From the NCBI RefSeq assembly GCF_001194135.2, contig NC_068987.1:16353787-16412692 (forward strand): 58,906 nucleotides of DNA. Reading direction: 5' to 3'. The position numbers and the translations under genes were made by a program. This document shows positions 3,776 to 40,399 of the stretch, piece after piece. A model generated the notes under the pieces. The model searched no databases, was not told the DNA's origin, and saw nothing but the letters and a program-made list of their open reading frames with translations. How positions within the stretch are numbered: position 1 is the first letter of the stretch; each line of letters begins with the position of its first letter. This DNA comes from Octopus bimaculoides. Lineage: Eukaryota.

Positions 3776-3925
3776 TTGTGCAAATCTCTCCCGGAGCGCG
3801 TACTATGTCAGGTGAGATGTCATCGTAATCTGGATTACATTTGCACAAAAATGATTTCATGTAATGCTTACAGATGGCGTTCACGCTGCAGTAGTTGTAA
3901 CTCGAGTCTTGGCAGTGGTTGTATT
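3776..3925 (-). CDS. Exon D of EGF-SEA-EGF surface protein: second EGF-like domain (phase 1 to 1)
   Basis: Acceptor gttttgtttttttcag, donor gtaagtg, 150 nt. Encodes (E)YNHCQDSSYNYCSVNAICKHYMKSFLCKCNPDYDDISPDIVRAPGEICT with six Cys in EGF spacing. In frame with exon C. Absent from the ORF track. Confidence 0.92.
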
Positions 3926-4189
3926 CTGAAAAAAACAAAACACAAACAACAACAACAACAACAACGACATCAACAGCAAAATCAAAACACCAAAACCACA
4001 GTCAACACTTTTAACAAATCTTCACTTTATTATTTGCTTTCAGAGAACGTCCTCCCGTCCGTCNNNNNNNNNNNNNNNNNNNNNNNNNNNNNNNNNNNNN
4101 NNNNNNNNNNNNNNNNNNNNNNNNNNNNNNNNNNNNNNNNNNNNNNNNNNNNNNNNNNNNNNNNNNNNNNNNNNNNNNNNNNNNNNNNN

Positions 4190-4231
<42 letters not shown>

Positions 4232-4430
4232 CTGTTGTGCTAATGAAGGCTATTAAGTCAGAGACACGTGCTGCGACTATCCTCTTATCTTCAGGTAACA
4301 AAGCCTGTCCTTTTTCCATATTGGCATGTCAGTTTTGCAAAGTTCTTGATTTTTCAGATTTTTTCCCCCTTCGCAAGTGGAGCTGGCTTTAGCTGCCCTT
4401 AATCATCAATGGTGACACTTCCTCCACAAG

Positions 4431-4770
4431 CAGCGGATGTTAACATAAAGCTGAAGATTAGTGAAAAAGAGAATACCTACGCTGAACTATTGAGAAATCT
4501 GCAGTTACTTTATCCAGATTACAACTTCAGGTTTATACCTGTAATTATTGGGGCCCTGGGATATGTAATACACTGCCTAAATACCAATCTTGAGAAATTA
4601 GGCTTCTCAAAACCAGAAAGGAGAAAGCTAATTCGAAGACTACAGATGCAATACATCACTGGAACTGTAAAAATCTGTAAAACTTTCCAGAAGTTCGTAA
4701 TGCAAATATGAGCATATCTAGATACGCAACTATACACAAAACAAAACATGCAAATCTGCTTACATACATA
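4431..4770 (+). mobile_element. 3' fragment of a restriction-like-endonuclease (R2 superclade, R4/Dong/Hero-like) non-LTR retrotransposon
   Basis: ADVNIKLKISEKENTYAELLRNLQLLYPDYNFRFIPVIIGALG...ITGTVKICKTF matches the C-terminal RLE pattern (EK..KY..L, PVIIGALG, GT.KI). Followed by a short UTR and TACA repeat. Confidence 0.8.
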
Positions 4771-4780
4771 CATGCATACA

Positions 4781-4993
4781 TGATGGCCGTCCACTCGTGA
4801 CCGAGGAAGACCATTGCCGACCTTCAGGAACATTGTGCGCTCTAGGACTAACTTATATTTTGCATTTGCGGCTCCGTTGGTGGCTAATGAGCCCTGCTCT
4901 TGACAAGCATACACGACTGCAAACATTGCAGACCAAGCTTTACCCATTCACTATACGAGCCGTGCGCTTTCGCGCAGCTCGCTTAAGTTCTTC
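4781..4993 (-). mobile_element. RTE-clade LINE 3' end
   Basis: Minus strand reads EELKRAARKRTARIVNG*SLVCNVCSRVCLSRAGLISHQRS (RTE C-terminal zinc finger), ending GACGGCCATCA. Confidence 0.8.
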
Positions 4994-5382
4994 ATATGTA
5001 TACATACATACATACATGCATGCATGCATACATACATACAAACAAACAAACAAAAATACTCTTTTGTTGATGTTGAAATTCCAGTGAAGGAGTCTTGAAT
5101 CTAGGTTAGAAACCGGATCTTTCTCTATTGGTGAGAAATCTTGAAATAAAACTGACATACACATACAGCAACACAAAAAATATTGGTAGCGTTTACTAAA
5201 CGTGAACATCTATCACATCTTTGCTTTTGTGATCTAATTCCAGCGACTGACCTTTGTTCACTCGTTACAAACCAGTTCCCCTTTTTTATAGAAAGAATTT
5301 AAATAGTATATGAATATAGAATATTTAGTTCTATATACACTTACATCCATTCATCCATCCATCCCTACATACTACAGCTACC

Positions 5383-5446
<64 letters not shown>

Positions 5447-7687
5447 TTACTACTACTACTACTACTACTACTACTGTTGCTGCTGCTGCTACCACCACCA
5501 ACACCAGTAGCAGTAACACCACCGCCGTCGCCAACACCCCCACCATACCCCACCCCGCCACTACTACTGTCGTCAGTCTTAAACGGATACTGTTTGGTAA
5601 TATGTACCGTGCTTTCGTTAATGTCTTAGGTGCCTATTTAGTCGCGAGCAGACAGAGACACATTCTCAGCCCCCCCCCCTTACTCTTGACATCTTAGGAC
5701 ATCCATGATGTGACAGCTGGAAGGAGAGAGGGAGGGCTGCACTAGCCCAACACACACTAGGCTGGTACTCATTTTAGTTAAGGAGAGAAATGGAAGAACG
5801 AGAATTATAGCACCTAACTCCAAGATGCAACACACCACCCAGTCTAGGATTCGAACACGCACTCTAACCACTAAGCTGCGTTCCTTCACTGATGCTATAT
5901 ACGTACATACATGCATAAACACTTGCGTATATAATGTATGTATTTATGCATGTCTATGTACATATATGTTTGTATGTATGCGTACATAACACATACATAC
6001 AAACTTACGTACATGCATACATACAAGGATACATAAATACATGCATACATGCGTAATAATACATACATACATAGACGACATGTATTCGTACAAAATACAT
6101 ACATACACAAATATGCATGCGTACATACATACGTACGAACATATATAAATACATACGCAGAAACATACATACATACGTACAAACGCATACATACATACAT
6201 GCATACATATGGCCGTTAGCGACAGACTTGCAGACGCAGAGGTTCATTAAAAATGCGATTTTGAACGTTATCTCCTGTAACTATGCCAACCTGGAGAAAC
6301 GAAGACCAGTAAATCGCTCTGTTTTACTTTTACCAATAAGAGATGCACCTCTTACTCACCAATTCACCGCCATTCACACTAGGTTACACAAGAAATTCCC
6401 CCCTCATAGAATTTCGTTTATACTATTATGGTTGACAATAGCCCCAACATTAACATCAACACCACCGACGTACGTGTGAACCATTTTCGAAAGCGTAACT
6501 AAATCTATCGTCAAATGTAATATAGGTATCGAATTTTGACACAAGGCCAGCAATTTCAGGAGAAAGAGAATATCGACCCCAGTGTTTAACTGGTACTTAT
6601 TTTATCGACTCCGAAATGTTGAAAGGCAAGGCAAAGTCGTCCTCGGCGCAATTTGAACGCGAAGACGGATGAAATGTCGCCTAGTATTTTACCCGACGTG
6701 CCAACGATTCTGCCAGCTCGTCGACCGCTACTCTAAGAATATTGGTTTCAAATTTTGGCACGATGTCAGCAACTTCGGGGAAGGGGATAAGTCGATTACA
6801 TTGACCCCCGTTGTTCAAATGGGCCTATNNNNNNNNNNNNNNNNNNNNNNNNNNNNNNNNNNNNNNNNNNNNNNNNNNNNNNNNNNNNNNNNNNNNNNNN
6901 NNNNNNNNNNNNNNNNNNNNNNNNNNNNNNNNNNNNNNNNNNNNNNNNNNNNNNNNNNNNNNNNNNNNNNNNNNNNNNNNNNNNNNNNNNNNNNNNNNNN
7001 NNNNNNNNNNNNNNNNGGTGGACATTTTGCCCGGCGTGCTAACGATTCTGCCAGCTCGCTACCTTAATAATAATAATAATGATAATGGTTTCAAATTTTG
7101 CCACAAGGGCAGCAATTTTGAGGGAGGTGATGAGTCGATTACATCGACCCCAGTGTTTAACTGGTACCTATTTTATCAACTCCAAAAGGATGAAAGGTAA
7201 AGTCGACCTCGGTGGAATTTGAACTCAGAACACAGAGACGGGCGAAATGCTGTCAAACATTTTGCTCGGCGTGCTAAAAATTCTGCCAGCTCACCGCCTT
7301 GCATCGTCAAATTTAATGCCGCGTGTTACCGATAGAGGGCGGTGAGCTGGGAGAATCGTTAACAAGCTTTGACAAAATGCTTAGCAGCATTTCTTGCGAC
7401 TCTTTACGTTCTGGTCTGATTTCAAATCCTGCCGAGGTCAACTTTGCCTTTCAACTCTTCGAGGCCGATAAAATACATCACCAGACAAGTACTGGGGTCG
7501 ATGTAATCAACTTGCATCCCAACCCTCTCTTCAAGATAGCTGACTTTGAATCCTGCAAGGGGCCCGCCTCCCGTTTAGGGGGAATGTTGCATTCTCGGTC
7601 GCTTACACGCTATGGAAATCGGGTACTTTACGAGTCATGTGTCTATAAAATAATAAAGAAATACAAATAAACAAATAATTAATTTAC

Positions 7688-7934
7688 CTGTTATCTTGTT
7701 TTTGTTATTTAATCCTTCTAGTTGGTCCCATCTTATGTATACATAGGTTCCATTGTTTTGAGTCTCTGCGAGACCTTTCTTATAGATTTTTTCAATCTCC
7801 TCGACGCTAGGTGCGTCTGATTTCTCTACAGATATTCGAAAGTTCACTTCAACATAAGTAGGTTTCCAAATAATGTGGACTATTTGAACACCTAGCAAAC
7901 CTGGAAGCCTTTGAGAAGGAAATATTGATAGTAA
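7688..7934 (-). CDS. Exon C: C-terminal part of SEA domain (phase 0 to 1)
   Basis: Acceptor ttttctgtttcag, donor gtaaat, 247 nt. Encodes LLSIFPSQRLPGLLGVQIVHIIWKPTYVEVNFRISVEKSDAPSVEEIEKIYKKGLAETQNNGTYVYIRWDQLEGLNNKNKIT. Continues exon B in frame and fits the SEA strand/helix pattern. Confidence 0.88.
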
Positions 7935-8529
7935 CTGAAACAGAAAATAAACAGATAAAATAACGGGTAACAGCAGACAAGATAAAAATAAAGATAGCAT
8001 AAAAACAAAAAAAAAGATGTGGGTTAGTCAATTAAATTGACTCGAGTACATCACTGGTACTCTATTTTATCGATCCCTAAAATGATAAAAACAAATTTGA
8101 CCATGATGAGATTCGAGCTCTAAAAAAACCCCCAAAAAACCCGGAAGAAATGCTGAAAGGAATTTTGTCCGACGTTTTAACGAGTCTGCTAATCCATCAC
8201 GCATATAAACACAAACAACCACACATACGCGCGCGCAGGTGCATATATATATNNNNNNNNNNNNNNNNNNNNNNNNNNNNNNNNNNNNNNNNNNNTGGTT
8301 TGCGCCTGAAGAATACGTTTGAGTTCTCTCAACATATGAAACTGTTAGTAGCGCTTTAATACATGTATTGCGACCTTTAAGTAAATAAAATTATATATAT
8401 ATTTTATGTATGTATGCATATTTGTTTGTTTGTTTGTTTGTTTGTGTGTGTGTGGGGGGGGGCGTGCGTGTACCTACATACACATATATGCACGTATGAA
8501 AAAGTATACACACTTAAGCATATAATGAC

Positions 8530-8960
8530 GATGATGATTGTCCCTCCCGTCGATTTCGCCGTATGAGTGTTCGAAAGAATGGACCATAAATACAAGAAGC
8601 TAAAAAAGCTGCATCTATTTGCGATGGATGCATGAATGTAATTCGAGTCCAGGTATGGATTTTGCTACGAAGTCACAATGGAGACGATGGTGATTTTGAT
8701 TTCGCCAGAGATTGGACAAATGTCTCTGTTGATGAGAGGATATAATTCTTTTATTGTTCTATTTCTTCAATTCAAATAATTGTAAAGCATCATGACACAT
8801 TTTACGCCATTCAGATCGATGTAGGCAATAACTTTCCCAAGATGTTGAATGAAGCTGTCGGGATTTTAACGATTGTTTCAACTTATCCTTATACCTAGAA
8901 ATGGTCTTCCATTACCACGGAATTCAGTGGGTTGACAAAAACATTAAGGACGATACAAAA
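8530..8960 (-). mobile_element. RTE-clade LINE 3' fragment
   Basis: With one frameshift reads RGNGRPFL/RYKDKLKQSLKSRQLHSTSWESYCLHRSEWRKMC (RTE GRP..RYKD.LK...WE...R..WR motif), then CDFVAKSIPGLELH, ending in an ATC repeat tail. Confidence 0.75.
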
Positions 8961-9169
8961 TGTGGTTACATAAAAACGTGTAAAAAAATAAAATATTTGA
9001 AAGAAAAAAGAAGAAAAGAGAAAGAATCTAAACAGGAAATAATTCCCCAGTAGGAGAGGAGACCTCCGAGGGCTTTTTACGGAAACCCTCGAAAAGCATG
9101 GTGATCCTGATTACATTGGCAAGTACTTTTTTCAAGCTGTTCGTTTTCAATCTGAAGGTGCACGATCAG

Positions 9170-9690
9170 GGAAGGCTTGTTCGCTCAGACCATGTTCAGC
9201 AGTCTCATCTATCTTTTAACAAATTTGCTGGTCGGTAGCATTTCTTTCTCCATCCTCGCTCTCCTTTTCTAGTTAAACTTGAAAAAGTTCACGAAGGTTT
9301 GGCCATTAAGGAAGATGCTTGTCTTCAGCTCTTTCATTCTTGTCCAGCATTAAAGTAAATATGACATACAAAAAAATCTCTACGGACGTATGATGCTGTC
9401 CTCTTGATATAGGAATCTCCTACTAGGACCAATCAAGAAATCTACAAATTCAGAATCACTCTGATCACCGACAGCACGAGCCCACTCCCTGCTATTCTCT
9501 TGTCTACAGGGTTAGGGAACAAGAGCATAGAGTAGTTCCATTCACCTTAACCATTTTCGCCACAGTCACCCAGATTTTGACAAATTCGCTAGAAAGTGAA
9601 TATGAGATAAGCTCTTTCTCTCTACTTTTATTTTCCTTTCGAAGCAGAACTTGGAAAAGTCGACGACTGATTGACCAAAGAGGAAGGTAT
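9170..9690 (-). mobile_element. Degenerate L1/Tx1-like ORF2 3' remnants, apparently two pieces
   Basis: Two similar segments (GAATTTGTCAAAATCTGGGTGACTGTGGCGAAAATGG and AAATTTGTTAAAAGATAGATGAGACTGCTGAACATGG) resembling the F.KRW terminus. Recognised from memory only. Confidence 0.4.
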
Positions 9691-9904
9691 CTTTTCTACT
9701 CTAGGCACAAGACCCAGAATTTTTGGGGAGGGGGTTAGTCTATTAGATCGACCCCAGTACGCAAGTGGTACTTAATTTATCGACCCTGAAAGGATGAAAG
9801 GCAAAGTCGACCTCGGCGGAATTTGAACTCAGAACGTAGCAGCAGACGAAATACCCCTAAGCATTTCGCCTGGCGTGCTAACGTTTCTGCCAGGTCGCCG
9901 CCTT
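9691..9904 (-). mobile_element. tRNA-derived SINE, family B (OK/Nin-domain-like; name from memory). Representative of roughly 45 full or partial copies, e.g. 10250-10460, 15030-15190, 23110-23310, 28988-29182, 31085-31290(+), 33950-34155, 46100-46275, 50190-50760, 51760-52400(+), 53990-54430(+), 58580-58770
   Basis: Minus strand AAGGCGGCGACCTGGCAGAAACGTTAG...TGAGTTCAAATTCCGCCGAGGTCGACTTTGCCTTTCATCCTTTC.GGGTCGATAAATTAAGTACC...GTGCCTAGAGTAGAAAAG. The same motif recurs throughout the window. Confidence 0.9.
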
Positions 9905-10699
9905 TAGAGGTGTCCAATCTTGGTCTTTTCTTGGCTCGGGATTGCATCTCTCCCAAAAAGACGAGCTGAGGAAAAGCGTGCGTCGGCATAGTCGACGTCT
10001 AATACAACATCAGTTGCAAAATTAATAATAATGGTTTCAAATTTTGGCACAAGGCCAGCAATTTCAGGTAGAGGGATTACAGCAATTTCGGGTAAGTCGA
10101 TTACATCGACTCCAGCGCTCAACAGGTCATTATCTTATTGATCTCAAAAGGATGAAAGTTGACCTTGGTGGCATTTGAGCTCAGATCGTAAAGACGGACG
10201 AAATGACGCTCTGCCGGCTTGTTGCATTACATAACAACAACAATAGTAATCCCTTCTACTATAGGCGCAAGGCTTGAAATTTTGGGTTAGGGGGCTAGTC
10301 GATTTCATCGACCTCAGTGCTTAACTGGTACTTATTTTATCGTCCCCGAAGGGAGGACAGACAAAGCCGACCTTGGCGGAATTTGAACTCAGAACACAAC
10401 GCCGGAAGAAACACCGCTAAGCATTTTTCCGGCGTGCTAACGATCCTGCCAGTTAACTACCTTAGCAACAACATAAAGACTTAAGAATAACGTAAAGACT
10501 TAAGAATATACAAAACCTGAAAAGTTTAGGACTAGATGTGATTGAAACGATTTGGCTTAAATGCTAAGAGTATCAGTTTGCATTTTGTTATGTTGTCTTG
10601 CTTCATATTTACCAGAAAGTTTCCTGTTATGGACGGAGATAAAAGAGAAAACTAAACGCTCTTTATACTAAAATATGGAAGAAAAAACCTCCCCTGAAT

Positions 10700-10985
10700 T
10701 AACTAGATTTTGCCCTATCAAATATCAGCTGCCGATGTGGAAGCTGCTGACAGAACTGATGGTTGGAGGGATATAATTTCTACTTGAAATGGAATATCTA
10801 GATCCTCAAGAACAAATTATAACTATATATTGACGGAATATTGGCAAAATGATACTTCAACAGAGGATACATCGCAAGAAGAATCTATCTGAGGAATGGA
10901 TGGGTTGTTAAAAGAGTATATGAGAGGATTCCTTCTTCCTGGATTTTAAAATATTTGAAAATATTTGCCATCCACAATGTAATAA
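10700..10985 (+). mobile_element. Degenerate reverse-transcriptase fragment of an RLE-type (R4/Dong-like) LINE
   Basis: Remnants PMWKLLT and RKKNLS...VYERIPSSWILKYLKIF match the RT motifs PxxWKLLT and NL...DYKKAYDxVPHSWI. Frameshifted. Confidence 0.6.
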
Positions 10986-13900
10986 ATACTTTATCGATCG
11001 AGGTGATCATAAAGCTTCGGCTGCTTGTGTTGATATGTGATCATGGCAGTATATTCTTAGATGAAAGTGAGTTCAAAAGATATTTTCCAAGAAGATTCTT
11101 TGTCACAATTTCTGTTTCTTATTGGTATGATTTTGCCTGTCATATTGATCCTTAACATAAATCATTAAGCTTTAGATTTGAAAGTATGAGCATAAGAGCT
11201 GATTGGATCGTCGTCCAAAGTACGTAATTGGTTCGTATTTTATCAATCCACGAAAGATGAAAGATAAATCAACCACAGCGAGATTTGAAATCAGAATGCA
11301 AAGAAACACAAGTACCGCATTTTGCCAATCCATCAATCGATTCTGTCAAACTCATTTATTACAAAGCAAAAGCGCTAATTTCTTTGATACTGCTTGACAA
11401 AATATTCAGTATAGATGTTGAAATGAAGTTCACTAATGACAGAACCCTCTCTGTAAGACAAAGTCTATCGAGGACTAGATAATCTAATGTTTCTTCCCCT
11501 TTCTTATGATGGAAAAATACGATTTGAGGAATATTTGGCTGTTGTTTCTGGTTAACATGAGAAGCATCCTCATTGGTTATAATCAGCATTGCTATGGCTA
11601 TACTTGGGAACCCAAATGTTGCCTTTAAAGAATCCCAGAACACTGAAAACTTTTGAACAACACGAGATATGAGAACAAATGTGTTACCAGGAAGAGATGT
11701 TGCACTAGGCTTAACTGTTACAAATTTTCCAATTCTAGCCTCAATAAGTGGCCCCCTTTCACCAAAATAACCGCAAGTATCAGCACAATACTTGCATTAT
11801 TTGGAACAGCCAAAATATTATCGATCGCATATAGTATGCAAATATTTAGAATGGATAGAAAATACAATTTATTTTTACTTTCCTGTTGTGTAACTTTGCA
11901 CTGTAGTATAGAGGTTTTTACAAAAATCAACAACCTGTAACAGCTGATTGTCAACAAATTTTAACGCCCCGCCCCGTGCAAATAGCAACAGAAATTCTCT
12001 TAAATGCGATGATATAAGTAACATCTAGAAAAAAAAAAGAACTTCAAAGAAGTTTAATGTAAATAATATAACTAGTCGTTTTAAGACTCTATTAAACTTT
12101 AGTCAATATAAATATTTCTTTATCATAGAAATGACTGCGGCAATGGCTTGCCAAAACATGTAAGCAAGTCAGTAAATATATATATATATACTGTAAAACT
12201 ATCGAATAGAATACAGCATAGCCTCTACACACATAAATAACAAACACAAATTCAAAGAAAATTTCTCTTTAACATTAAGTTAATAAAGAGAATTAATATT
12301 GTAAATAAATGTTTAACAAATACAAAATGGCATCAAAATTGATGTAGGTGCTAAAAAACATGGCCTCCTCAAAACAGACATTTAGCTATCAATATTTCGA
12401 TTCCCAAGTCAAACCGAATCAAAAAAATGTTAATAAACAAAAGAATAATCGATCTTCTATGATATACTTTGACAAAACGGCATTATTATATAACATGATT
12501 TACTAAAAGATATTTCAAATTTTGAACAAGAAGAGGCACGCTGTGCTGCCTTGGTTTTTGTCTCAAAGCAAAACCATAAAATAATCTGCTGATTTCGATA
12601 CACACTACAAGCTAATTGACCAATGAAATAGGATCTCCGTTATTTTGACTAAAGTAGAAATTATATGTCCAAAGTTTTCAAAAGAGTGTTAGTGATGTAG
12701 TGTCTTGAAAACAAAAATCCACAAAAAAAAAAAAAAAAAAAAAAAATAAATAAAAGACAAAAACTCAATGAAACGTGATGTACAGAAGTACAGCAATTAA
12801 TTGTTCGATTTCCGAACCAAACCACATATATATGTTGAAGAACAAAGAAGAGCATGTCTAAGATGTATTTCGACAACAGAGCGTTGTTATTTAGCATATT
12901 CAGAAAATATATAATGGTGTCGTTAGTGCAGGGTCTAAAAAAGCATGGCTTCCTTTAACTAGAAGCTCCGTAATCAATAATTCGATTTCCAAACTAAATC
13001 AAACCAGACCAAGCCAGAAATATGTCAATGAATTAAAGAACACATTAAGACATTGCTCCTCAAACCCTATTAACCACGGCTCCTTTTCGTTTGCTAATAC
13101 CTTTTCAATGACATCTAACTACGATTTAGTAATATTAAATACATCATATTTACATATGCATATATATGTATACACAAGCCAGGACATTACCTAAAGCTAC
13201 AGGTGCAGTGATCGTCTTTATTGCATGTATGGAAATACAAATTTCGACAATGTCTTAAATTATAGTGTTTTTTGCATAAAATTATGAGGGACAATTTAAA
13301 CTGTGTGATTTTGTTTGATAGACCGGAGACGGTCTCAGGTCGATTGGTACCAAAAGGACTAAGGCACGTGCTACAGAAGAGATAAACATAGATTAAATCA
13401 GCTGAATCCGGTTTCTTACGTAACTGTTACACCTATCTTCAGAGAAACTGTGTATTTATTTTTAAAACACACACAAAACGAAACTTCGTACATTTTTAGA
13501 AACAGCAAGCAAAACGAAATTCGATGATACTAAACGTCAACTAGGTAAAACTAAAAGAAAAAAAGACACTCATTAATCTAAGAAGAAAGCAAATAGTGTA
13601 AGGAAAATAACAAGCAGAAAAAATAAAGCAAACTAAACGGCACATTTAAGGAATATAAAATAATATGTGAAGACATTCTAGAGTCAGTAGGAAGCTTTAA
13701 AGGAAAGATTCAGGTTAAGACCAACAGAATTAAGAGCTGTAATAAAAGACATCACTAAAGGAAAACAGCAATCATTTTTTGCTTTTTAAAGAAAAAGTCA
13801 AGTATTATTCTTCCAACCAAAAATAGTTCTGGTTATGGAAAAAAGAAATGGAGATATGAATTCTGTCTAAAAGAACAGATAGCTACGACAACCAAAGAAT

Positions 13901-15481: not shown

Positions 15482-15608
15482 CAGGGTGTCCACAAAGTCT
15501 GGCTACATGGAGTAAATAAAATCAAAACATAAACAATTAAATATAAGAAATAATAATTTCTTAAAGTATGTGTTAATCCCCATGTACCCAGACTTTGTGG
15601 ACAACCTG
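15482..15608. mobile_element. 127-bp Tc1/mariner-type MITE
   Basis: 29-bp TIRs (CAGGGTGTCCACAAAGTCTGGCTACATGG and the reverse complement of CCATGTACCCAGACTTTGTGGACAACCTG), 27/29 identical. TA follows the right end. Confidence 0.85.
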
Positions 15609-17324: not shown

Positions 17325-17437
17325 CTCGCGCTTCAGTTGTTCCTCCAGTTTCTGGTATCCACCTGACAACTCGTTTAGCTCGACATTTAAGAGAGGCTGC
17401 CTTTTGATATAGATGTTTGCCCAGAAATACTGGACAG
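17325..17437 (-). CDS. Exon B: N-terminal part of SEA domain (phase 1 to 0)
   Basis: Acceptor ttcttcttcttcacag, donor gtaaca, 113 nt. Encodes (A)VQYFWANIYIKRQPLLNVELNELSGGYQKLEEQLKRE, resembling SEA F..I.I...EL...S..Y..LE..L. In frame with exons A and C. Confidence 0.88.
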
Positions 17438-19060
17438 CTGTGAAGAAGAAGAATAACAGAAGTAAAAAACAAATTAACAAAAATTCTCTTAGAAATTAAT
17501 TTTAAAAAAAGCGAACAAAACAACTTGAACATATAAAAATGAATAAAGTAAATAATTCACAAAGTAAATAGCTGGTCTCGTATCTGCTCCATTTTCCCAC
17601 CTTCGACATACTCGTCTCTCTACCCATCATTACTTTTGTTGCATATAACCCAACCGACTTCTCATTAACCATTATTCCCAGTGCTTCCTCTCTTGAACAG
17701 TAGCCTTCTGGGATGTTCTCTTTGTGCTCATGTTTTTTTTTGTTTTTGACAACAAATTAACGTTAACGGCAAAGTTCATCAATGTTGGCCGTCATGGCCA
17801 TAGATCCTTCCTCCCGATTCGGCAAATGTAAAAGGAGTACAAAAAAGGTAAAAAAAAAAAAGTCCAAAACTACTGCTCTGAGAACTAGGGAAATGTGCGA
17901 TAAACTACGTAAAAGTCAGGCTGTAGCGGCCAGCTTCATTCTTCACGTTGGTTACGAGTTTAAATGTTATGGGAGCTGTCTTTTGATTTTACAAGTAAAA
18001 TGTAAAACACAGCTGAACACCAATACAAATAATGATTTCAGTAAAAGTCATTTATAATAGTGAAGTTGTCACCAACAGGTGCAAAGTAAATTTATTTACC
18101 GCTGATTTCTATATCTCGAATTTCGTGTACTTTTCTTTAAAGTAAGTTTTGCAGGTCATAATTATGCATTGGTACAAGTAATCTATTTTGATTATGTCCA
18201 GAAAGCTCAGTGTAATTTTATTTTTAAAAGTTCATAGTTCACCTTTGTTCTGAGTTTTATTATTTACTTTCGTTGTTTCATAAAGTTTTCTCAATACTTC
18301 TTTCGGAACACGCAAGTTATTCGAGAAGTTTTATGAGAAAACCATATTGAATAAACATTCTATGATATATGAACCGATAGAAAATTATACATATCACTTT
18401 TCTGTTTACATATTCAGCTGAAGTAAAACATCTATATTTTCTCCGTGTATTCCGTGATTAATTTTTCTCCCAAATTAATTTCATGAATAAATATAATTAT
18501 TGGAGAGGAAAATTTTGTCTTTCTTCGAAAATATTTTTCTATTTCCAAGGTTTTACAAAAATGAATAGAAGAAAGAAAAAGTGTTGTATAAAGATTTTGA
18601 TGGGGTAGAAGAAGTTAGAACATGATAAAGAGAATCGAAGAGGGAGAAGGGAGAGAAAATGAGAGTTTGGGAGAATAAAGAAAAAAATGAAAGGATTAGA
18701 GTGTATGTACAGTGTGAGACGGGATATACTGTAAGTTTACGTAACGTTTCTAAATTATGAATGTGTGTGTTCGTATATATGTATGTATGCGTACACACAT
18801 ACACATCCATACATGCATATATCCATATACTCACACGTATATAAATTTACATACATTAAACATTCGATTTGTACTTAAAGCAACTATTTCAGTTTACATT
18901 TAATTTTTCAGTCAGTATAACTGGTATTTATCAGTGAATAGAAAGAGGGAATGTGACGACATTTTGTCTGTCTATCTATCTATCTATCTATCTATCCGTC
19001 TATGTATGTATGTATCTATCTACTTATCTCTCTCCCTCTCTCTATCTCCCCCTCTCTCTC

Positions 19061-19100
<40 letters not shown>

Positions 19101-20379
19101 NNNNNNNNNNNNNNNNNNNNNNNNNNNNNNNNNNNNNNNNNNNNNNNNNNNNNNNNNNNNNNNNNNNNNNNNNNNNNNNNNNNNNNNNNNNNNNNNNNNN
19201 NNNNNNNNNNNNNNNNNNNNNNNNNNNNNNNNNNNNNNNNNNNNNNNNNNNNNNNNNNNNNNNNNNNNNNNNNNNNNNNNNNNNNNNNNNNNNNNNNNNN
19301 NNNNNNNNNNNNNNNNNNNNNNNNNNNNNNNNNNNNNNNNNNNNNNNNNNNNNNNNNNNNNNNNNNNNNNNNNNNNNNNNNNNNNNNNNNNNNNNNNNNN
19401 NNNNNNNNNNNNNNNNNNNNNNNNNNNNNNNNNNNNNNNNNNNNNNNNNNNNNNNNNNNNNNNNNNNNNNNNNNNNNNNNNNNNNNNNNNNNNNNNNNNN
19501 NNNNNNNNNNNNNNNNNNNNNNNNNNNNNNNNNNNNNNNNNNNNNNNNNNNNNNNNNNNNNNNNNNNNNNNNNNNNNNNNNNNNNNNNNNNNNNNNNNNN
19601 NNNNNNNNNNNNNNNNNNNNNNNNNNNNNNNNNNNNNNNNNNNNNNNNNNNNNNNNNNNNNNNNNNNNNNNNNNNNNNNNNNNNNNNNNNNNNNNNNNNN
19701 NNNNNNNNNNNNNNNNNNNNNNNNNNNNNNNNNNNNNNNNNNNNNNNNNNNNNNNNNNNNNNNNNNNNNNNNNNNNNNNNNNNNNNNNNNNNNNNNNNNN
19801 NNNNNNNNNNNNNNNNNNNNNNNNNNNNNNNNNNNNNNNNNNNNNNNNNNNNNNNNNNNNNNNNNNNNNNNNNNNNNNNNNNNNNNNNNNNNNNNNNNNN
19901 NNNNNNNACATATATATATATATATAGTAGTTGATTTCGATTAACATATCTCATTTGAGTTATATCCCTTGATGCTTGCAGATTTAAAAGAAAACAAAGA
20001 TTTTTGTCTCCAAATTGCTTATATAATCACAGGTAGTCGATGTTTTTCTACTCCCAATGCTAAACATGTGAGATTCTACCTTAGTTATATTTATCATACA
20101 GGTCGTTCAAATAACACCACCGCATCAACACAATGTATGTACGTACGGCAAAGTAAGAAGAAAGCGCCTGGTAAGACGTAAACAGCGCGGTTTCAATTCA
20201 TAGTTCAAGCTGGTTCATTCCGGTTTATTTCTTTTTTCCTTGTTAATGCTCTCTGTTGAAATTTGTTAATCCCCTCATCTACCTGTTTTACCTTCTCCTG
20301 AAATACAAGGGCTTTGTAACTCGTCCGCTGTGCAGGTTGTGGAGTGTGGGGGTGGATGTGCTGGTAGTGGTGGTGGCGG

Positions 20380-20990
20380 TTATGATGAAGTACTACCACC
20401 GCTGTTGCCATCACCATCATCGCCATAACCATCTCCACAACAACCCCTATTATGTTCTCTCAGACAAACACTATAACCACCACCGCCAACACAACCACCA
20501 CTACCACCACCATCCCCTACTGCCAACAATAGCACCATTACTACTACTACTACTACTACTACTACCTCTACAAGCACCACTTACACACCATCACCTTCAC
20601 ACTATTACCACCACCACAACTACTACCATCCCCATCAGCTTCACTATTACTACCACCACCACCACCAATTACACAATCACCGTCAATACTACTATTACTA
20701 CTATCTTCACCATCACCACCCTCACACCATTATCACCACCACAACCACCACCACCACCACCACAACCATCACAAACCATCACTACTACTACTACCATACC
20801 CATCGGCATCATCATTAACACTACCACCACCACCACAACCACTACAACCACCACCACCACCATCACCACTACTACTACCATATCCATCGGCATCACCACC
20901 ACCACCACCACCATTATTCCCCACATCGTCGCTACCACCATATCCAAATCCTCACTAACCGTCACTTCACAAACTACTGAAGTTTGAACA
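20380..20990. repeat. Cryptic (CAC/CTA)n low-complexity block
   Basis: Direct reading. Gives poly-T/H/P ORFs in several frames. Confidence 0.9.
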
Positions 20991-21259
20991 AACATTTCCC
21001 TTTTTTCACCAGTGTCGAAAAACGAAACAAAACAAAACACAAAACCCCTTATCCTACCCCCACATCGACACCACCCCCAATCCAGTTCACAAACAAGAAA
21101 ACACAGCGTTCAGCATTAGGATGAAAGTGGGACAGGATTGGTAGTAGAAATACGACTGACTCATAAGAGGAACCGAATTAGGAAGTCAGCGGCGGCTGGG
21201 ATAGTGACAGAAGTCTCTTAAGTAAATACACCATGTACACAGTAGAGGCCAGTGTATAG

Positions 21260-22290
21260 CTGTAGTGCTGGTTGTGGTGATGGTGGTGGTTGTGTTTGTA
21301 GTAGTTCTGTGATTGGGTTGGTGGTAGTAGCCGTGGTGGTGGTGTTTGTAGTGATATTAATTGTGTTGGTGGTTATTGTGGTGGTGGTAGTAGCAGCGGT
21401 GTTTGTTGTAGTGGTCGTAGTTGTAGTCGTAGTGGTAGTTGCTGTGGTGGTGGTGGTAGTTGTATTAGCAGTAGTAGTTGTGGTGATGGTGGTAGTTGTG
21501 TTGGTGGTGGTAGTAGTTGTGTTGGTGGTGGTAGTTGTGTGGGTGGTGGTAGTTGTGTTGGTGGTGGTAGTTGTGTTGGTAGTAGTTGTGACGGTGTTTA
21601 TTGTAGTGTTTCTATTGATGGTAGTTGTAGTGGTGGTGATGGTGATGGTGTTTGTGGTGGTGTTTGTGTGGTGGTGGTGGTGGTGATGGTGTTTGTGGTG
21701 GTGTTTGTGTGGTAGTGGTGATGGTGTTTGTGGTGGTGTTTGTGTNNNNNNNNNNTGATGGTGTTTGTGGTGGTGTTTGTGTGGTGGTGGTGATGGTGTT
21801 TGTGGTGGTGTTTGTGTGGTGGTGGTGATGGTGTTTGTGGTGGTGTTTGTGTGGTGGTGGTGTTGGCGGTGGTTTGTGGTGATGCTAAAAGTTGTTGTGG
21901 TGGTGGCAGTTGACGGTGCTTGTTGTAGTGTTTGTGTCGTTGATGGTGTTTGCGGTGGTGGTTGTTATGGCAACATCTGTTGTAACGGTCGTAGTCGTTG
22001 TTCTGGTTGTCATGGTGATGGTTGTAGCAATGCTTGTGGTGATGGTAGGGAGCCGTGGAGTTTGTTGTGCTTGTGGTAGTTTTGGTGGTGTTTGTGATAG
22101 TAGTAGAAACTGTGATGTATGTGGTGGTGGTGGTGGTGGTAGTAGCTGTAATGTTCGGAGTGATGATAGCTGTGGAGAATGTGTTGGAGATAGTTTGGTG
22201 GTGCTTGTAGTAGTAGTAGTAGTTGTTGTTGTTGTTGCAGTAGTAGTAGTAGTAGTTATAGTGTTTGTGGTGTTGGTAGTTGTAGTGATG
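21260..22290. repeat. Cryptic (GTG/GTA)n block with GATGGTGTTTGTGGTGGTGTTTGTGTGGTGGTGGT subrepeats
   Basis: Direct reading. Opposite polarity to the 20380-20990 block. Confidence 0.9.
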
Positions 22291-22429
22291 TGATGGAGAT
22301 AGGCAGCAATATCGGCATAAAAACATCTGTACTCATGCAAAATATGGCTGAAGAAAACACCATTTCATTTGTTTGTCTATTTATTTATTTATTTTAAATA
22401 ATCTTTATTGCTTTCGAAGCGAATACATG

Positions 22430-23050
22430 TTTACATCCATCGATTGATTCCTACATCTGCCACTCCCTCCATACACCCATGTACCCTTGAATTCATAAAA
22501 AAAATCCCCATCTATCCACCCATCGCCGATCTCATTCCGGCATCCAATCTATCCGTCCTTCAATCCATCCGTCCGTCTGTCCATCCATCCATCCATCCAT
22601 CCACCCATCCATTTATTCGCCAATCCACCAATCCACCAACCTGCCAATTCAGGAACTTATTCAGCCATGTTCTAACCCGAGCTCTCTACCAGTACCGCCC
22701 TCCCTCCCTCCATCCTCCCACACAACCATCCATCCACCAATGTAGCCATCAATCCAGCGATGTATCCATCCATTCATCCAACCATCTATCGATTAATCGA
22801 TCGGTCCATCCAACAGATCCATCCATACACCAATCTACTAACCCATGAATCCATCCATCCACCCATCGATCGATCGATCCATCCACCCATTCATCCCTGC
22901 CTCCCCATCCATTCCATACTCTCTCTCTCCCCTTTCCATACTCCCTCCCCCTCCCCTTCCTTCCTTCCTTCCATACTGCCTCTCTCCCTCCCCTTCCATA
23001 CTCCCCCTCCCTCCCCTCTCTCTCTCCTTCCTTCCTTCCTTCCTTCCACA
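22430..23050. repeat. Degenerate (CCAT)n tract merging into a pyrimidine-rich CCTT/CCTTCCATACT tract
   Basis: Direct reading. Confidence 0.85.
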
Positions 23051-25693
23051 ACAACTGTTAGTGCGTCGAACAAAATGCTCAGAGACATTCGGCAAAGGTC
23101 AATGATGGTTTCAAATTTTGGCACAAGGTCAGTAATTCTGAGGGGAGGTGCTTAGTCACTACCATCGACTCCAGTATTAGACTAGTACTTCTATCGACCC
23201 CGAAAGAATGTGAAAGGCAGAGTTGACCTCGGCGGGATTTCAAGTCTAAACGTAAAGACCTGGATAAAATGTCGCCAAGCATTTTGTTCGACGCGCTAAC
23301 GATTCTGTCAGCTCAATACTTTTTAGCAAAGGTCAATAATGAGCAGAAGAAGGTATCAGAGTTGCCAAGATTTTAGGCTTATGCACAAAATATGGCTTAC
23401 CGAACTTCATCTCATTACCCTGCAACCGAAGTTCAAATCCCATCATGGTAGACTTTGTCTTTTGTTCTTTAAGGGGTTGATAAAATAAATAACTATGATG
23501 CCATTGTTATGTTTTATATCATTGCATGCGTCCTGCAGGCTTCCACGTGACTGGGTCTATTTATGACCGGTTACTGGTTCGATGCAAGAGATTTGTTATT
23601 CAGTTGAGCAAAACTACTGAACATAAAGGATCGCGTGTGACAGCGATTATATTGCATAAACCTTGTACATCACGCCATAGGAAGTTATGTGTTGTAGCCG
23701 ATGTAATGGACTTTACCGGTCCATTAATGAATGTGTAGCCTTGTTGTAGAGATGAGGTAGGTGGAGAGAAATCGATACAGATTGGAGCGGGGTTCACAAT
23801 TTCGAGAATTCACCTCTGTTCAATTTTTAGGTCAATATTTTCTCGACCTTGAAGACGTAAAATAAACGAAAGGCCAACTTTGGGCGGAATTTGAAGACAG
23901 AACGGAAACGAACAAGACAATAATAATGTGAAGTGTTTATTTAGTGTTGTACTTCAGTTCTACATACAACAATAATAATAATAACGTTGATGATAAGAAT
24001 AGCAATAGAAAAATAACAGAAATAATAGGAACAGTTATAACAAGGAGACAGGCGTCTTAGTCTACTTCTAGAGCGATCGTGAAGAGGTCATTTGATGGAA
24101 TTGTTAGAGCATCGGACAAATGTCTTGTAGCATTTGTTCCGTCTCTTTGCGTTCAGATTTCAAATCCCATTGAAGTTGACTTTGAGTTTAATTCTTCCAT
24201 GGTCTTTAAAAATAAAGTAATGCCAGGCCCTGGGTTTGGTTTTCTACCACTCTCTTCAGCGTTGATTTGCTGAAGCAGAAATGTCGTTATGACAAAAATA
24301 TACTGCTCAATACACAAATTTGCTTGTCAGTTGATTGACATTAATCACTTGAGCATGTCCCATAATGGCTGACAATATGTGCATCTCTGATCATGAGCAG
24401 AGATGCACATATTGGGGGAACATCACAGCCATGAGTTGAGAAGGATTCATTGGGTTCGAATAAATGTGATAAAAGCAAAGTTTGAAGGAAATATTAGGCA
24501 TTCATCATACCTAGGGGTAAGCAAATAGGAAATAACAGGTGTTACCCAAGGACAAACGGCGTGTTAATATTTTGTTTAGAATGTGCTGACCAAGGCGACC
24601 ATTTTGTTTTTCAGAAAAATCAGTAACCAGGAAAAGCTTTGAAATGAAAGCTTCCGGAAAATCGACGATGTACTTATTGTACCATTATCATTTCAGAACG
24701 GGGATAAATAATTATTTCCACGACTTATCAAAGCTATTTTCGATATATTCTGCTTGGGGACAATCTTGAAAATAAAAATTTCCAGGAGCTCATTGGAAAT
24801 ACTGAACGAAGATAGTGGAGGAAATAATTAAAGTTTCATGTTTTTCTTAAGAATTCTACCGAATAGCGCTTTTGTCTTCGTAGTAAATAACATTATCAAT
24901 TTGTGATTTCTTAAACAACGGGACAAGCTATGTCAAATCTCCATTAGTTTTCTTATTGAACAACATTCAAGTCTATATTCTCTGTTGGTAGTTGACAGGA
25001 ATTTGTTAAATATTTAAACATTTTTTTTCTATTTACGTCGTTCCTCTTAACGTTTGTGTCTAAGACACGGTTTAGGGTGTTCATCTTATATTCCTCAATA
25101 CAGAGCTGCTTCACATTAGTTCTCAATGTTAGTTGAATATTAGTATATAGGAAGAAACAATAGTAGTCTATGTTGTGTTACTCTTTATATAAACTTAACG
25201 GTTAGACAAACAGAGAACTACAAAAGCATTTTTTCTTGTTATTTTAATGTCCCAGTTTTATTGTCGTGATTAAGGCAGAGCCCGCTCGCTTTTAGATGTG
25301 ACCGGACTATTGGTCCTATTGAAGAATGACTCCTTTTGACATTGGGATGAGAGTGAAGTAGGGGTGGCTCATGCTATTATCCGGGTCCCTAAAGCCCCAT
25401 TTTTGTCACTAAAAAACTGAGGATAGGAGGTGGAGATTGGACTCAAAAATAGAATAGATGCAACATGATATCTTATATGATTCACTAACCCACTGCTTTG
25501 GGCTGATATCTACCCCTAGAGGACGAAAAACAAAGACAACCCCGGCAAGATTTTCAAGACAGTAGGAGGCGATTTCAAGGAGATTTGGTTGCTATTTCTA
25601 GCAGGATTGATTGACCAAAAAAGGAATTTAAAATGCCTAAATCATATATAAACTTCTACAATTTATGTAAAGATGCAAATACCATCTACTTAC

Positions 25694-26197
25694 CAGCACA
25701 CAAACCGGTTTTCCTGGAGAACATATATCCCCTCATACATTCACAATTTCCTGACTTTGTACACCGTTCAAAGTTTTGCACTTTGCATCCCTCGTGGGTC
25801 TTTTCATTGCAAATTTGTTGCGAATTATCATCGCGGCGTTGAATAATTATTGCCGCTGTAGTTGTTGCCGTATTTATAGTCCTCGCTATCCGTAGAAGAT
25901 CGCTGGAGGTCAAAGGTGAAGAGATTATTCCATTGTAGGAGAGGTTATTGAAAACCGCTTGGTTGCTAAGGTTACTGTTTGTTGAAGAACCGATGAGATT
26001 AATTCCCGCTGTTTGATTGAAATAAGTTCGTCGATGAGTTTTATGCTTCAGCGCAGAAATGGTCTCATTAACCTTGTTTAGAACAATTATATTGGAACTT
26101 TTGACGGCACTGCCTTTGTCTGTTTGAGTATTATTGACGAAAACGGGAATAGATTTGTCCGAGGTGAAGTTTAAACTAGTAGACACGATGTCCGCTT
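25694..26197 (-). CDS. Exon A: Ser/Thr/Asn-rich glycosylated stalk plus first EGF-like domain (phase 1 to 1)
   Basis: Acceptor ttattttataattacag, donor gtaagt, 504 nt, inside the 200-aa ORF. Six N-x-S/T sequons (NFT, NNT, NET, NQT, NLS, NLS). Ends CNEKTHEGCKVQNFERCTKSGNCECMRGYMFSRKTGLCA. Confidence 0.92.
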
Positions 26198-40398: not shown

Positions 40399-40399
40399 C

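What the first reader, a model, noticed from the sequence alone, without database searches (positions are those of the whole stretch)
3776..26197. Hidden multi-exon gene: glycosylated stalk - EGF - SEA - EGF cell-surface protein
Seen: four minus-strand exons with canonical sites and matching phases (1-1, 1-0, 0-1, 1-1) across introns of about 8.3, 9.4 and 3.8 kb. Junctions read GLCA|AVQYF, LKRE|LLSIF, NKIT|EYNHC with no stop. Known: EGF-SEA-EGF behind a glycosylated stalk is the layout of MUC13/HEG1-type mucins and the sea-urchin 63-kDa sperm flagellar membrane protein. Inference: a membrane-tethered mucin-like adhesion or barrier protein whose TM or GPI exon lies left of the window. Its orthology and function in cephalopods are unknown to me.
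Basis: partly seen in the sequence, partly recalled or inferred. Interest (0 to 1): 0.7.

Follow-up and report, generated by a model that had tools for sequence, protein, structure and literature searches.

The report
Octopus mucin-13-like EGF-SEA-EGF membrane gene
The four minus-strand exons are real, spliced and expressed, and form the middle of an already catalogued octopus gene for a cell-surface glycoprotein of the "mucin-13-like" EGF-SEA-EGF family, so the reading is correct but the gene is ordinary and not hidden.

Summary
The four minus-strand exons (26197-25694, 17437-17325, 7934-7688, 3925-3776) have AG/GT sites and one open frame. RNA contigs from four runs cover exactly these exons and read across all three predicted junctions. 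All six assembly gaps in the finding's span are intronic.

- EGF1 and EGF2 each have six invariant cysteines.
- The 120 residues between them are a SEA domain. Pfam misses it on this protein alone. Pfam hits in aligned homologues, an AlphaFold model with Foldseek, and profile hits to solved SEA domains all support it.
- The SEA domain lacks the G|SVVV self-cleavage motif.
- The "stalk" is 127 disordered, S/T/N-rich residues with six N-glycosylation sequons, 1.6% proline and no repeats. It is not a true mucin (PTS) domain.

The gene continues beyond the finding on both sides:
- The signal-peptide exon falls in the window's gap at 34236-34947.
- RNA joins exon 4 to an exon left of the window. 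The O. vulgaris orthologue continues there with two more EGFs, a TM helix and a cytoplasmic tail.

The gene is not hidden. An identical 340-aa model exists (UPI0006958E66). Orthologues are named "mucin-13-like" or "63 kDa sperm flagellar membrane protein-like". Function is untested.

The parts
34236..34947 (-). Assembly gap that, by synteny, holds the first coding exon (signal peptide, ...LQILISSVRSS plus the first base of the Glu codon).
   Evidence: The RNA overhang upstream of exon 1 is absent from the window sequence. It matches the end of the O. sinensis first coding exon 33/33, at L001 10065-10097 followed by GT. The sequences flanking that exon in L001 (8466-9338 and 10208-10341) map to window 35868-34948 and 34227-34094, on either side of this gap.
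25694..26197 (-). Exon, phase 1-1. Encodes a 127-aa S/T/N-rich disordered N-glycosylated region and EGF-like domain 1 (CNEK...GLC, six Cys).
   Evidence: AG/GT sites and open frame. RNA contigs cover exactly 25694-26200 in X1, X5 and X7. Six N-X-S/T sequons. pLDDT is about 30 for the stalk and 82-88 for EGF1 in the orthologue model.
17325..17437 (-). Exon, phase 1-0. Encodes the first part of the SEA domain (strand 1 and helix 1: AVQYFWANIYIK...YQKLEEQLKRE).
   Evidence: RNA contigs cover 17325-17438 in four runs, with overhangs reading into exon 1 and exon 3. Secondary structure from the model.
7688..7934 (-). Exon, phase 0-1. Encodes the rest of the SEA domain (beta hairpin GVQIVHIIWKPTYVEVNFRISV, helix 2, last strand). 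The hairpin turn lacks the G|S self-cleavage site.
   Evidence: RNA contigs cover 7688-7936, with overhangs into exons 2 and 4. Alignment with relatives that carry GSVVV. SEA hits.
3776..3925 (-). Exon, phase 1-1. Encodes EGF-like domain 2 (CQDSSYNYC...PGEIC, six Cys, long C5-C6 loop of the MUA-3 / 63-kDa type).
   Evidence: RNA contigs cover 3776-3928. The downstream overhang encodes IGCSCKNNGT and is not in the window. Profile hits to solved EGF domains have E-values of 1e-10 to 1e-12.
2386..2490 (-). Orthologue of the terminal exon of the O. sinensis 403-aa model XP_036360274.1. It would give a TM-less product ending ...KDVIP, with a stop earlier than in O. sinensis. It appears unused here.
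   Evidence: tblastn 77% identity. An acceptor AG is present. No RNA contig in four runs lies on it. Only runs labelled DNA, plus one of unlabelled kind, hold the sequence.
3926..25693 (-). Three introns (3926-7687, 7935-17324, 17438-25693) that contain all six flagged assembly gaps and many copies of a ~150-bp interspersed repeat.
   Evidence: Intron lengths are estimates because the gap lengths are estimates. The O. sinensis introns are longer.

Best explanation
The four exons are the central part of a single-copy, expressed octopus gene. By inference the species is most likely Octopus bimaculoides. The gene encodes a type I membrane glycoprotein of the lophotrochozoan 'mucin-13-like' family.

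Domain order, N- to C-terminus:
1. Signal peptide (exon in the gap at 34236-34947).
2. A 127-aa disordered S/T/N-rich segment with six N-glycosylation sequons.
3. EGF1.
4. A SEA domain without the self-cleavage site.
5. EGF2.
6. Off the window to the left: EGF3, EGF4, a TM helix and a cytoplasmic tail of about 140 aa.

Shown: exon structure, splicing, expression, domain folds, family membership, and continuation of the mRNA beyond the window on both sides.

Inferred: the protein sits at the cell surface as an uncleaved, glycosylated juxtamembrane EGF-SEA-EGF rod. It could act as a surface barrier or sensor, or as a matrix-attachment molecule, by analogy with MUC13 and with nematode MUA-3/MUP-4. 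Because the Gly-Ser of the SEA hairpin is replaced by Pro-Thr, the ectodomain is probably not split into two non-covalently held subunits as in MUC1-type mucins.
For: - Splicing and expression.
- Frame and splice sites.
- Public models: identical P0001; O. sinensis P0002 plus P0003 (a split model); O. vulgaris P0004, 565 aa, 'mucin-13-like isoform X2', with TM and tail.
- Family across molluscs, a brachiopod, an annelid, a priapulid, amphioxus and arachnids.
- Twelve invariant EGF cysteines.
- Pfam SEA in 9 of 18 aligned homologues at the aligned position.
- AlphaFold model with a beta-alpha-beta-beta-alpha-beta fold, block-mean pLDDT about 64-92 over residues 130-345.
- Foldseek top hits MUC16 SEA, TMPRSS6 and HAT SEA, target-normalised TM-score (TMt) 0.58-0.67 for the stand-alone SEA-domain entries.
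- Profile against PDB: TMPRSS11D SEA 3.6e-8, 2e7v 9.6e-8.
- A hydrophobic segment (19-residue Kyte-Doolittle mean of 2.1 or more; 2.3 or more in all but one) C-terminal of EGF2 in 15 of the 18 aligned sequences. The three exceptions are P0001 (a partial model), P0002 (the TM-less O. sinensis model) and P0009 (the 358-aa Lottia model).
- 5' exon in the gap.
- dN/dS of 0.45 against O. sinensis.
Against: - Pfam on this peptide alone finds no SEA and only a sub-threshold EGF_3 hit.
- The TM and tail exons are outside the window. For this species they are inferred from a 30-nt RNA overhang (8 of 10 residues identical to O. vulgaris), contig lengths and orthologues.
- The structure was modelled on the O. 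vulgaris orthologue (about 90% identical), not on the window protein itself.
- Tissue, localisation, glycosylation, absence of cleavage and function are all untested.
- The run kinds are labelled 'RNA?' by the tool.
Confidence: 0.85

Rival explanations
1. The main product is a secreted, TM-less glycoprotein ending at the exon 2490-2386, as in the O. sinensis RefSeq model of 403 aa. It would act as a soluble EGF-SEA-EGF factor.
For: XP_036360274.1 (P0002) uses the orthologous terminal exon. The window copy keeps an acceptor AG and an open frame of 24 codons. Zebrafish HEG, a MUC13 neighbour, is reported to have secreted isoforms (PMC1552070).
Against: No RNA contig in four runs lies on 2335-2560. 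Only runs labelled DNA, plus one of unlabelled kind, hold this sequence. All four runs join exon 4 to a different, off-window exon. The tail is poorly conserved: Cys changes to Ser and there is an early stop relative to O. sinensis. In O. sinensis the next model (P0003) starts 9 kb downstream and supplies EGF-TM-tail, which points to a split annotation.
Confidence: 0.07
2. It is a true transmembrane mucin and a one-to-one orthologue of vertebrate MUC13. It would form a heavily O-glycosylated, shed-able glycocalyx barrier on gut or skin epithelium.
For: Same order of modules as MUC13: signal, glycosylated N-terminus, EGF, SEA, EGF(s), TM, tail. NCBI names relatives 'mucin-13-like'. PMC1552070 describes the MUC13 domains.
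Against: There is no PTS domain: P 1.6%, S+T 26%, no tandem repeat, only 127 aa. No G|SVVV site is present. None of the roughly 20 hits whose names were looked up, out of the 150 listed in the exhaustive search, is a vertebrate protein. Equally close relatives are named after the 63-kDa sperm protein, and EGF2 is of the MUA-3 type (PMC2150763). The shared module therefore looks like an old bilaterian cassette rather than proof of MUC13 orthology.
Confidence: 0.08

Closest known systems
Predicted 'mucin-13-like' proteins of molluscs (O. vulgaris CAI9725382.1, Argonauta hians GAB1608242.1, Pomacea XP_025111492.1, Biomphalaria KAI8786698.1) and O. sinensis LOC118764059 plus LOC115213994
   Same: Direct orthologues and family members: 91% (O. 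sinensis), 56% (Argonauta) and 24-36% (gastropods) identity to the O. sinensis query in the exhaustive search. They share the same stalk-EGF-SEA-EGF module, twelve conserved cysteines and a TM segment after the EGFs. All lack Gly-Ser in the SEA hairpin.
   Different: None in kind. The window holds only the four middle exons. The O. sinensis annotation splits the gene in two. The window-species public model (UPI0006958E66) reads through the last donor, giving '...TSK*'.
Human and chicken MUC13 (transmembrane mucin)
   Same: Signal peptide, glycosylated N-terminal region, EGF-SEA-EGF(-EGF) next to the membrane, single TM and a cytoplasmic tail (PMC1552070 for MUC13; for the octopus family).
   Different: MUC13 has a PTS tandem-repeat mucin domain. 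The octopus stalk has none. Orthology is not shown. The octopus orthologue has three EGFs after SEA, counted from the Cys patterns and model strands of P0004.
Sea-urchin 63-kDa sperm flagellar membrane protein (the 'S' of SEA) and proteins named after it (Priapulus XP_014681005.1)
   Same: EGF-SEA-EGF module. The Priapulus member matches the O. sinensis orthologue over its residues 157-371 at E = 2.9e-7 and carries a Pfam SEA hit above threshold. EGF2 is of the unusual type that PMC2150763 says is shared by this protein and MUA-3/MUP-4.
   Different: The Priapulus relative keeps a G-S at the hairpin (LPGSLIV), and the octopus protein does not. The sea-urchin sequence itself was not available for comparison here. 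No evidence ties the octopus gene to sperm.
C. elegans MUA-3 / MUP-4 (epidermal attachment receptors)
   Same: Type I membrane proteins with SEA modules interleaved with EGF repeats next to the TM. EGF2 matches Trichuris MUA-3-named proteins in up to 29 repeats. Weak Pfam EGF_Mua-3 hit.
   Different: MUA-3 and MUP-4 are more than 2,000 aa long with dozens of EGFs, a vWFA domain, LDL-A repeats and a tail linked to intermediate filaments (PMC2150763, PMC2150771). The octopus protein is about 600 aa with four EGFs and an unrelated tail.
Non-cleaving SEA domains (MUC16 SEA, HAT/TMPRSS11D and TMPRSS6 SEA)
   Same: Best structural and profile matches of the central domain.
   Different: Only the fold is shared (13-19% identity), and the surrounding architecture differs. 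That these particular domains do not cleave is my recollection of the literature, not a result obtained here.

Membership tests
SEA domain (Pfam PF01390) | Direct match of the protein to the family HMM above the curated cut-off | tested here: not met
   hmmscan of the 337-aa window peptide at E up to 10 gives no SEA hit. The O. vulgaris orthologue gives none either.
SEA domain (Pfam PF01390) | Homology by transitivity or profile: aligned relatives match SEA, and the family profile matches solved SEA domains | tested here: met
   9 of 18 aligned homologues hit SEA, best E = 8e-13. The Patella hit at 407-492 corresponds to the octopus AVQYF... start, and the Priapulus hit scores 28.1 bits against a 26.4 cut-off. 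Profile A3 against PDB gives TMPRSS11D SEA 3.6e-8, 2e7v 9.6e-8 and 1ivz 1.3e-4. A profile built only from the 11 cephalopod, gastropod, brachiopod and annelid sequences gives TMPRSS11D SEA 0.0021 as its top hit.
SEA domain (Pfam PF01390) | Beta-alpha-beta-beta-alpha-beta ferredoxin-like fold | tested here: met
   AlphaFold model of orthologue P0004: E168-181, H195-214, E220-230, E234-244, H251-266, block-mean pLDDT 64-89 over residues 161-290. Foldseek against PDB: MUC16 SEA, TMPRSS6 and the 2e7v SEA, probability 1.00, target-normalised TM-score 0.58-0.67 for the stand-alone SEA-domain entries.
Self-cleaving SEA (MUC1 type) | G|SVVV-like Gly-Ser at the turn of the strand 2-strand 3 hairpin | tested here: not met
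   The octopus has WKPT-YVEV at the position where amphioxus relatives have RPGSVVV/RSGSVVV and Priapulus has LPGSLIV. All nine mollusc sequences lack Gly-Ser there. The motif definition is from PMC4456727.
EGF-like domain | Six-cysteine pattern C-C-C-CxC-C, conserved across relatives, with matches to known EGFs | tested here: met
   Twelve invariant Cys columns. Pfam EGF_3 hits 17 of 18 relatives, but on the window peptide scores only 17.4 bits, below the 28.5 cut-off. Profile hits to ADGRE5, Notch, NELL2 and uromodulin EGFs at 4e-12 to 1e-9.
Transmembrane mucin (MUC13 type; criteria of PMC1552070: PTS domain plus SEA, supported by SEA phylogeny) | PTS (Pro/Thr/Ser-rich, usually tandem-repeat) mucin domain | tested here: not met
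   The stalk is 127 aa with S 14%, T 12%, P 1.6% and N 13%. No tandem repeat at the DNA level. The six N-X-S/T sequons are not more than composition predicts (p = 0.19).
Transmembrane mucin (MUC13 type) | Single TM helix and cytoplasmic tail after the EGF-SEA-EGF region | tested here: inconclusive
   Not encoded in the window. RNA joins exon 4 to an off-window exon encoding IGCSCKNNGT. O. vulgaris P0004 continues with IGCGCMNNGT..., EGF, EGF, a TM (helix 412-454 in the model) and a tail. The X5 contig has 777 nt downstream of exon 4, enough for about 681 nt of remaining CDS.
Transmembrane mucin (MUC13 type) | Orthology to vertebrate MUC13 (SEA phylogeny or reciprocal best hits) | not tested
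None of the hits whose names were looked up is a vertebrate protein. The name 'mucin-13-like' comes from NCBI's automatic naming.
63-kDa sperm flagellar membrane protein / MUA-3-type EGF | EGF with a long C5-C6 loop (...GY.D.SPD....PGE.C) shared by these proteins | tested here: inconclusive
   EGF2 matches Trichuris MUA-3-named proteins in 16-29 repeats per protein. Pfam EGF_Mua-3 gives only E = 0.075. PMC2150763 states that this EGF type is shared by MUP-4, MUA-3 and the 63-kDa protein. The sea-urchin protein itself was not compared.

The most novel reading that the evidence does not exclude
Molluscs, cephalopods included, carry a clade of the old bilaterian EGF-SEA-EGF membrane cassette in which the SEA self-cleavage Gly-Ser has been lost and no PTS domain is present. 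The molecule would then be a covalently continuous, force-bearing surface tether or sensor, closer in logic to MUA-3/MUP-4 attachment receptors than to shed-able mucins. Octopuses might also produce a lineage-specific soluble isoform through the exon at 2490-2386.
Probability: 0.3. Interest if true: 0.35.

Novelty: already known. Interest (0 to 1): 0.15.

Why it matters
It matters little beyond annotation quality. The work shows that three public models of this gene are defective:
- The window-species model is truncated and reads into an intron.
- The O. sinensis gene is split into LOC118764059 and LOC115213994.
- The first coding exon of the window species sits in an assembly gap.

It also gives the correct architecture: signal peptide, N-glycosylated linker, EGF, non-cleaving SEA, three EGFs, TM and tail.

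For people who study membrane mucins and SEA domains it adds a data point. The EGF-SEA-EGF juxtamembrane cassette is widespread in bilaterians, and the mollusc branch has lost the autoproteolytic motif. No function is known for any lophotrochozoan member.

Tried and rejected
I used per-exon calls and overhangs instead.
2. Searches for the upstream and downstream RNA overhangs in the window found nothing, even with 11-12-mers. Those exons are not in the readable sequence.
3. Pfam on the peptide alone gave no SEA.
4. A profile search of the word-indexed 5.8-billion-protein database with the module alignment returned only the self hit and one EGF protein, so it was uninformative. The exhaustive representative search was the useful one.
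5. tblastn of full orthologues against the window found no paralogue and no TM, EGF3 or EGF4 exon.
7. A GPI-anchor reading was rejected, because orthologues have a TM helix and a long tail.
8. A pseudogene reading was rejected. The gene is spliced, expressed in several runs from several studies, has an open frame, and dN/dS is 0.45.
9. A literature search for 'mucin-13' together with 'octopus' found no paper.
10. Tissue of expression could not be read, because run and sample names are coded.


Full report
**1. Observation**

The window is 58,906 bp with 38% GC and 16 N-gaps. Their lengths are 504, 113, 247 and 150 nt, with phases 1-1, 1-0, 0-1 and 1-1.

All six gaps flagged by the scan's program lie in introns: 3926-7687, 7935-17324 and 17438-25693. 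No exon is interrupted, and only the intron lengths are uncertain.

**2. RNA evidence**

Twenty-four public runs were listed for exon 1, and 18 of them hold it. Twelve of the holders carry the species label 'organism A' and are marked 'RNA?'.

Logan contigs of runs X1, X5 and X7 cover 25694-26200 and nothing beyond. Their overhang below 25694 is the reverse complement of the first 30 nt of exon 2.

The same test on exon 2, exon 3 and exon 4 gave, in all four runs, overhangs that are the ends of the neighbouring exons. All three junctions (25694/17437, 17325/7934, 7688/3925) are therefore confirmed.

In run X5 a single 1939-nt contig carries exons 4, 3, 2 and 1 back to back (record positions 778-930, 928-1176, 1175-1288, 1288-1794). 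No extra exon hides in the gaps.

**3. The gene extends beyond the finding on both sides**

*Upstream.* The contigs continue 42-152 nt past exon 1 with sequence that is not in the window. Reverse-complemented, it reads ...LQILISSVRSS plus the G of the split Glu codon. It is identical (33/33) to the end of the first coding exon of the O. sinensis orthologue (L001 10065-10097, followed by GT).

The O. sinensis sequences on either side of that exon map to window 35868-34948 and 34227-34094. The signal-peptide exon therefore falls in the window's gap at 34236-34947.

*Downstream.* All four runs join 3776 to an exon that is not in the window. It begins TTGGCTGCAGTTGCAAGAATAATGGAACGT, which translates as IGCSCKNNGT.

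The O. vulgaris orthologue CAI9725382.1 (P0004, 565 aa) continues after ...GEICT with IGCGCMNNGT.... That opens two more EGF domains, a TM helix (LLVIILCSTLGGLLFLTLLICIWCIF) and a tail of about 140 aa. The 777 nt that the X5 contig carries beyond exon 4 are enough for the roughly 681 nt of remaining CDS.

By synteny the window's first base corresponds to about L001 65.9 kb, and the EGF4 exon lies at L001 70865. The anchor is a TM helix, not GPI.

**4. An unused terminal exon inside the window**

Window 2490-2386 (minus strand) is the orthologue of the last exon of the O. sinensis RefSeq model XP_036360274.1 (P0002, 403 aa, no TM). It has an acceptor AG and would add NNNSQSRRDEKCTTREIIFKDVIP*, with a stop earlier than in O. 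sinensis and one Cys replaced.

No RNA contig of four runs lies on it. The only runs that hold the sequence are labelled DNA, plus one of unlabelled kind.

In O. sinensis the next gene model (P0003, 209 aa: EGF, TM, tail) starts 9 kb further on. The O. sinensis gene therefore looks split by the annotation. A soluble isoform is possible but unsupported in this species.

**5. Not hidden**

The word-indexed search returned two clusters:
- P0001 is a 340-aa MetaClust/UniParc entry (UPI0006958E66), 100% identical to the four exons. It ends '...TSK' because it reads through the last donor.
- The O. sinensis and O. vulgaris cluster includes a member named 'mucin-13-like isoform X2'.

**6. Domains**

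Pfam on the window peptide gives only a sub-threshold EGF_3 hit (17.4 bits against a cut-off of 28.5) and no SEA.

The exhaustive search of 1.84 billion representatives listed the best 150 proteins, all at E of about 1e-3 or lower. About thirty of them match as one stretch over roughly residues 155-372, that is the whole EGF-SEA-EGF module.

Those whose names were looked up are:
- Argonauta 'mucin-13-like'
- Lottia, Patella, Bradybaena
- Pomacea and Biomphalaria 'mucin-13(-like)'
- Lingula, Capitella
- Priapulus '63 kDa sperm flagellar membrane protein-like'
- amphioxus, a sea urchin, a spider, a scorpion and a tick

*EGF.* In an 18-sequence alignment the twelve cysteines of EGF1 and EGF2 are invariant.

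*SEA.* Four lines of evidence agree:
- Pfam SEA is found in 9 of the 18 sequences, at the position aligned to octopus AVQYF...NKIT.
- An AlphaFold model of P0004 built with this alignment has a block-mean pLDDT of about 64-92 over residues 130-345. Between the EGFs it shows a beta-alpha-beta-beta-alpha-beta domain.
- Foldseek against the PDB ranks MUC16 SEA domains, TMPRSS6 and the SEA domain of airway trypsin-like protease first. For the stand-alone SEA-domain entries the target-normalised TM-score is 0.58-0.67 and the rmsd is 3.2-4.5 Å.
- A profile of the module hits solved SEA domains (TMPRSS11D 3.6e-8, 2e7v 9.6e-8, 1ivz 1.3e-4) and solved EGFs (4e-12 to 1e-9). A profile built without any relative carrying the canonical G-SVVV motif still has the TMPRSS11D SEA as its best hit (0.0021).

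The exon-to-domain map is: exon 1 = stalk plus EGF1, exons 2 and 3 = SEA, exon 4 = EGF2.

**7. What differs from a mucin**

*Cleavage motif.* The SEA hairpin turn reads WKPT-YVEV. Amphioxus relatives have RPGSVVV or RSGSVVV there, and Priapulus has LPGSLIV. All nine mollusc sequences lack the Gly-Ser. On established knowledge of SEA autoproteolysis (G|SVVV in MUC1; PMC4456727), the octopus domain is predicted not to cleave. This is an inference.

*Stalk.* The 'stalk' is 127 aa with S 14%, T 12%, N 13% and P 1.6%. It has six N-X-S/T sequons, all kept in O. vulgaris, but no more than the composition predicts (p = 0.19). It has no tandem repeat and pLDDT of about 30. Under the criteria of Lang, Hansson and Samuelsson (PMC1552070: PTS domain plus SEA or VWD) it is not a mucin. 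The same paper states that HEG has no identifiable SEA domain, so HEG1 is not a layout match.

*EGF2 type.* EGF2 is of the unusual long-loop kind. It matches Trichuris proteins named MUA-3 in up to 29 repeats. PMC2150763 says this EGF type is shared by MUP-4, MUA-3 and the 63-kDa sea-urchin sperm protein.

**8. Mechanism**

*Shown:* a spliced, expressed, conserved gene (dN/dS 0.45 against O. sinensis from 17 synonymous and 28 non-synonymous differences) whose product has the folds listed above.

*Inferred:* a type I surface glycoprotein. The rigid EGF-SEA-EGF-EGF-EGF stem holds a short N-glycosylated, disordered tip away from the membrane, and the stem is not split by SEA autoproteolysis. Fifteen of the 18 aligned family sequences have a hydrophobic segment after EGF2. 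The three without one are a partial model (P0001), the TM-less O. sinensis model (P0002) and the short Lottia model (P0009).

A barrier or sensor role (MUC13-like) and a matrix-attachment role (MUA-3/MUP-4-like) are both compatible with the data, and nothing here discriminates between them. Tissue could not be read because the run names are coded.

**9. Verdict**

But the gene is already catalogued and belongs to a widespread, automatically named family.

Useful corrections:
- The first coding exon is in a gap.
- The public models are truncated or split.
- The exon at 2490-2386 is probably not used.
- The SEA domain is a non-cleaving type.
- The stalk is not a PTS domain.

Noticed in passing
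window 7891 (exon 3): C>T on the + strand in RNA contigs: fixed in X5 and X15, both alleles in X7, reference allele in X1. It changes GGT to GAT, Gly220Asp in the window-peptide numbering (LLGVQIV becomes LLDVQIV) at the start of SEA strand 2. The gastropod relatives and cephalopod P0007 have Asp at this position, so it looks like a harmless polymorphism.
   Followed up: partly
window 7133-7300, 9737-9904, 10297-10464, 15071-15190, 29033-29184, 31098-31262, 32240-32569, 33713-34150, 47488-47836, 50183-50756 and others: Dozens of copies of a ~150-170-bp interspersed repeat in both orientations, also present in many copies in the O. sinensis locus at 72-90% identity. It looks like a SINE-like family filling the introns. 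It was seen only as BLAST hits.
   Followed up: no
window 35296-35463, 36372-36715, 38814-39004, 43562-43853, 44074-44236, 48445-48674, 58295-58566: A second repeat family that repeatedly abuts assembly gaps and microsatellites. The ORF artefact '...GFGRRKLKEARRIY...' recurs in it. It probably explains why the assembly breaks at these places.
   Followed up: no
window 40274-40684 (+): A 136-aa ORF ending ...GGDRVMVWGCMSFSGPGMLFPCEGRMNSNTYTSM recalls, from memory, the C-terminal part of Tc1/mariner transposases. Pfam found nothing at E <= 0.01, so this is unconfirmed.
   Followed up: partly
L001 (O. sinensis CM016865.1) 10001-61619 and 70808 onwards: RefSeq splits one gene into LOC118764059 (403 aa, no TM) and LOC115213994 (209 aa, EGF-TM-tail). 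The EGF3 exon between them was not found in the fetched sequence and may sit in or near the 100-N gap at L001 68304-68403.
   Followed up: partly
window 20256-22340: A long low-complexity stretch inside intron 1 that gives spurious ORFs of 120-240 aa in several frames (poly-Thr/His/Pro on one strand and poly-Val on the other). It is next to the 10-N gap at 21746-21755. It has no match to the gene's orthologues.
   Followed up: no
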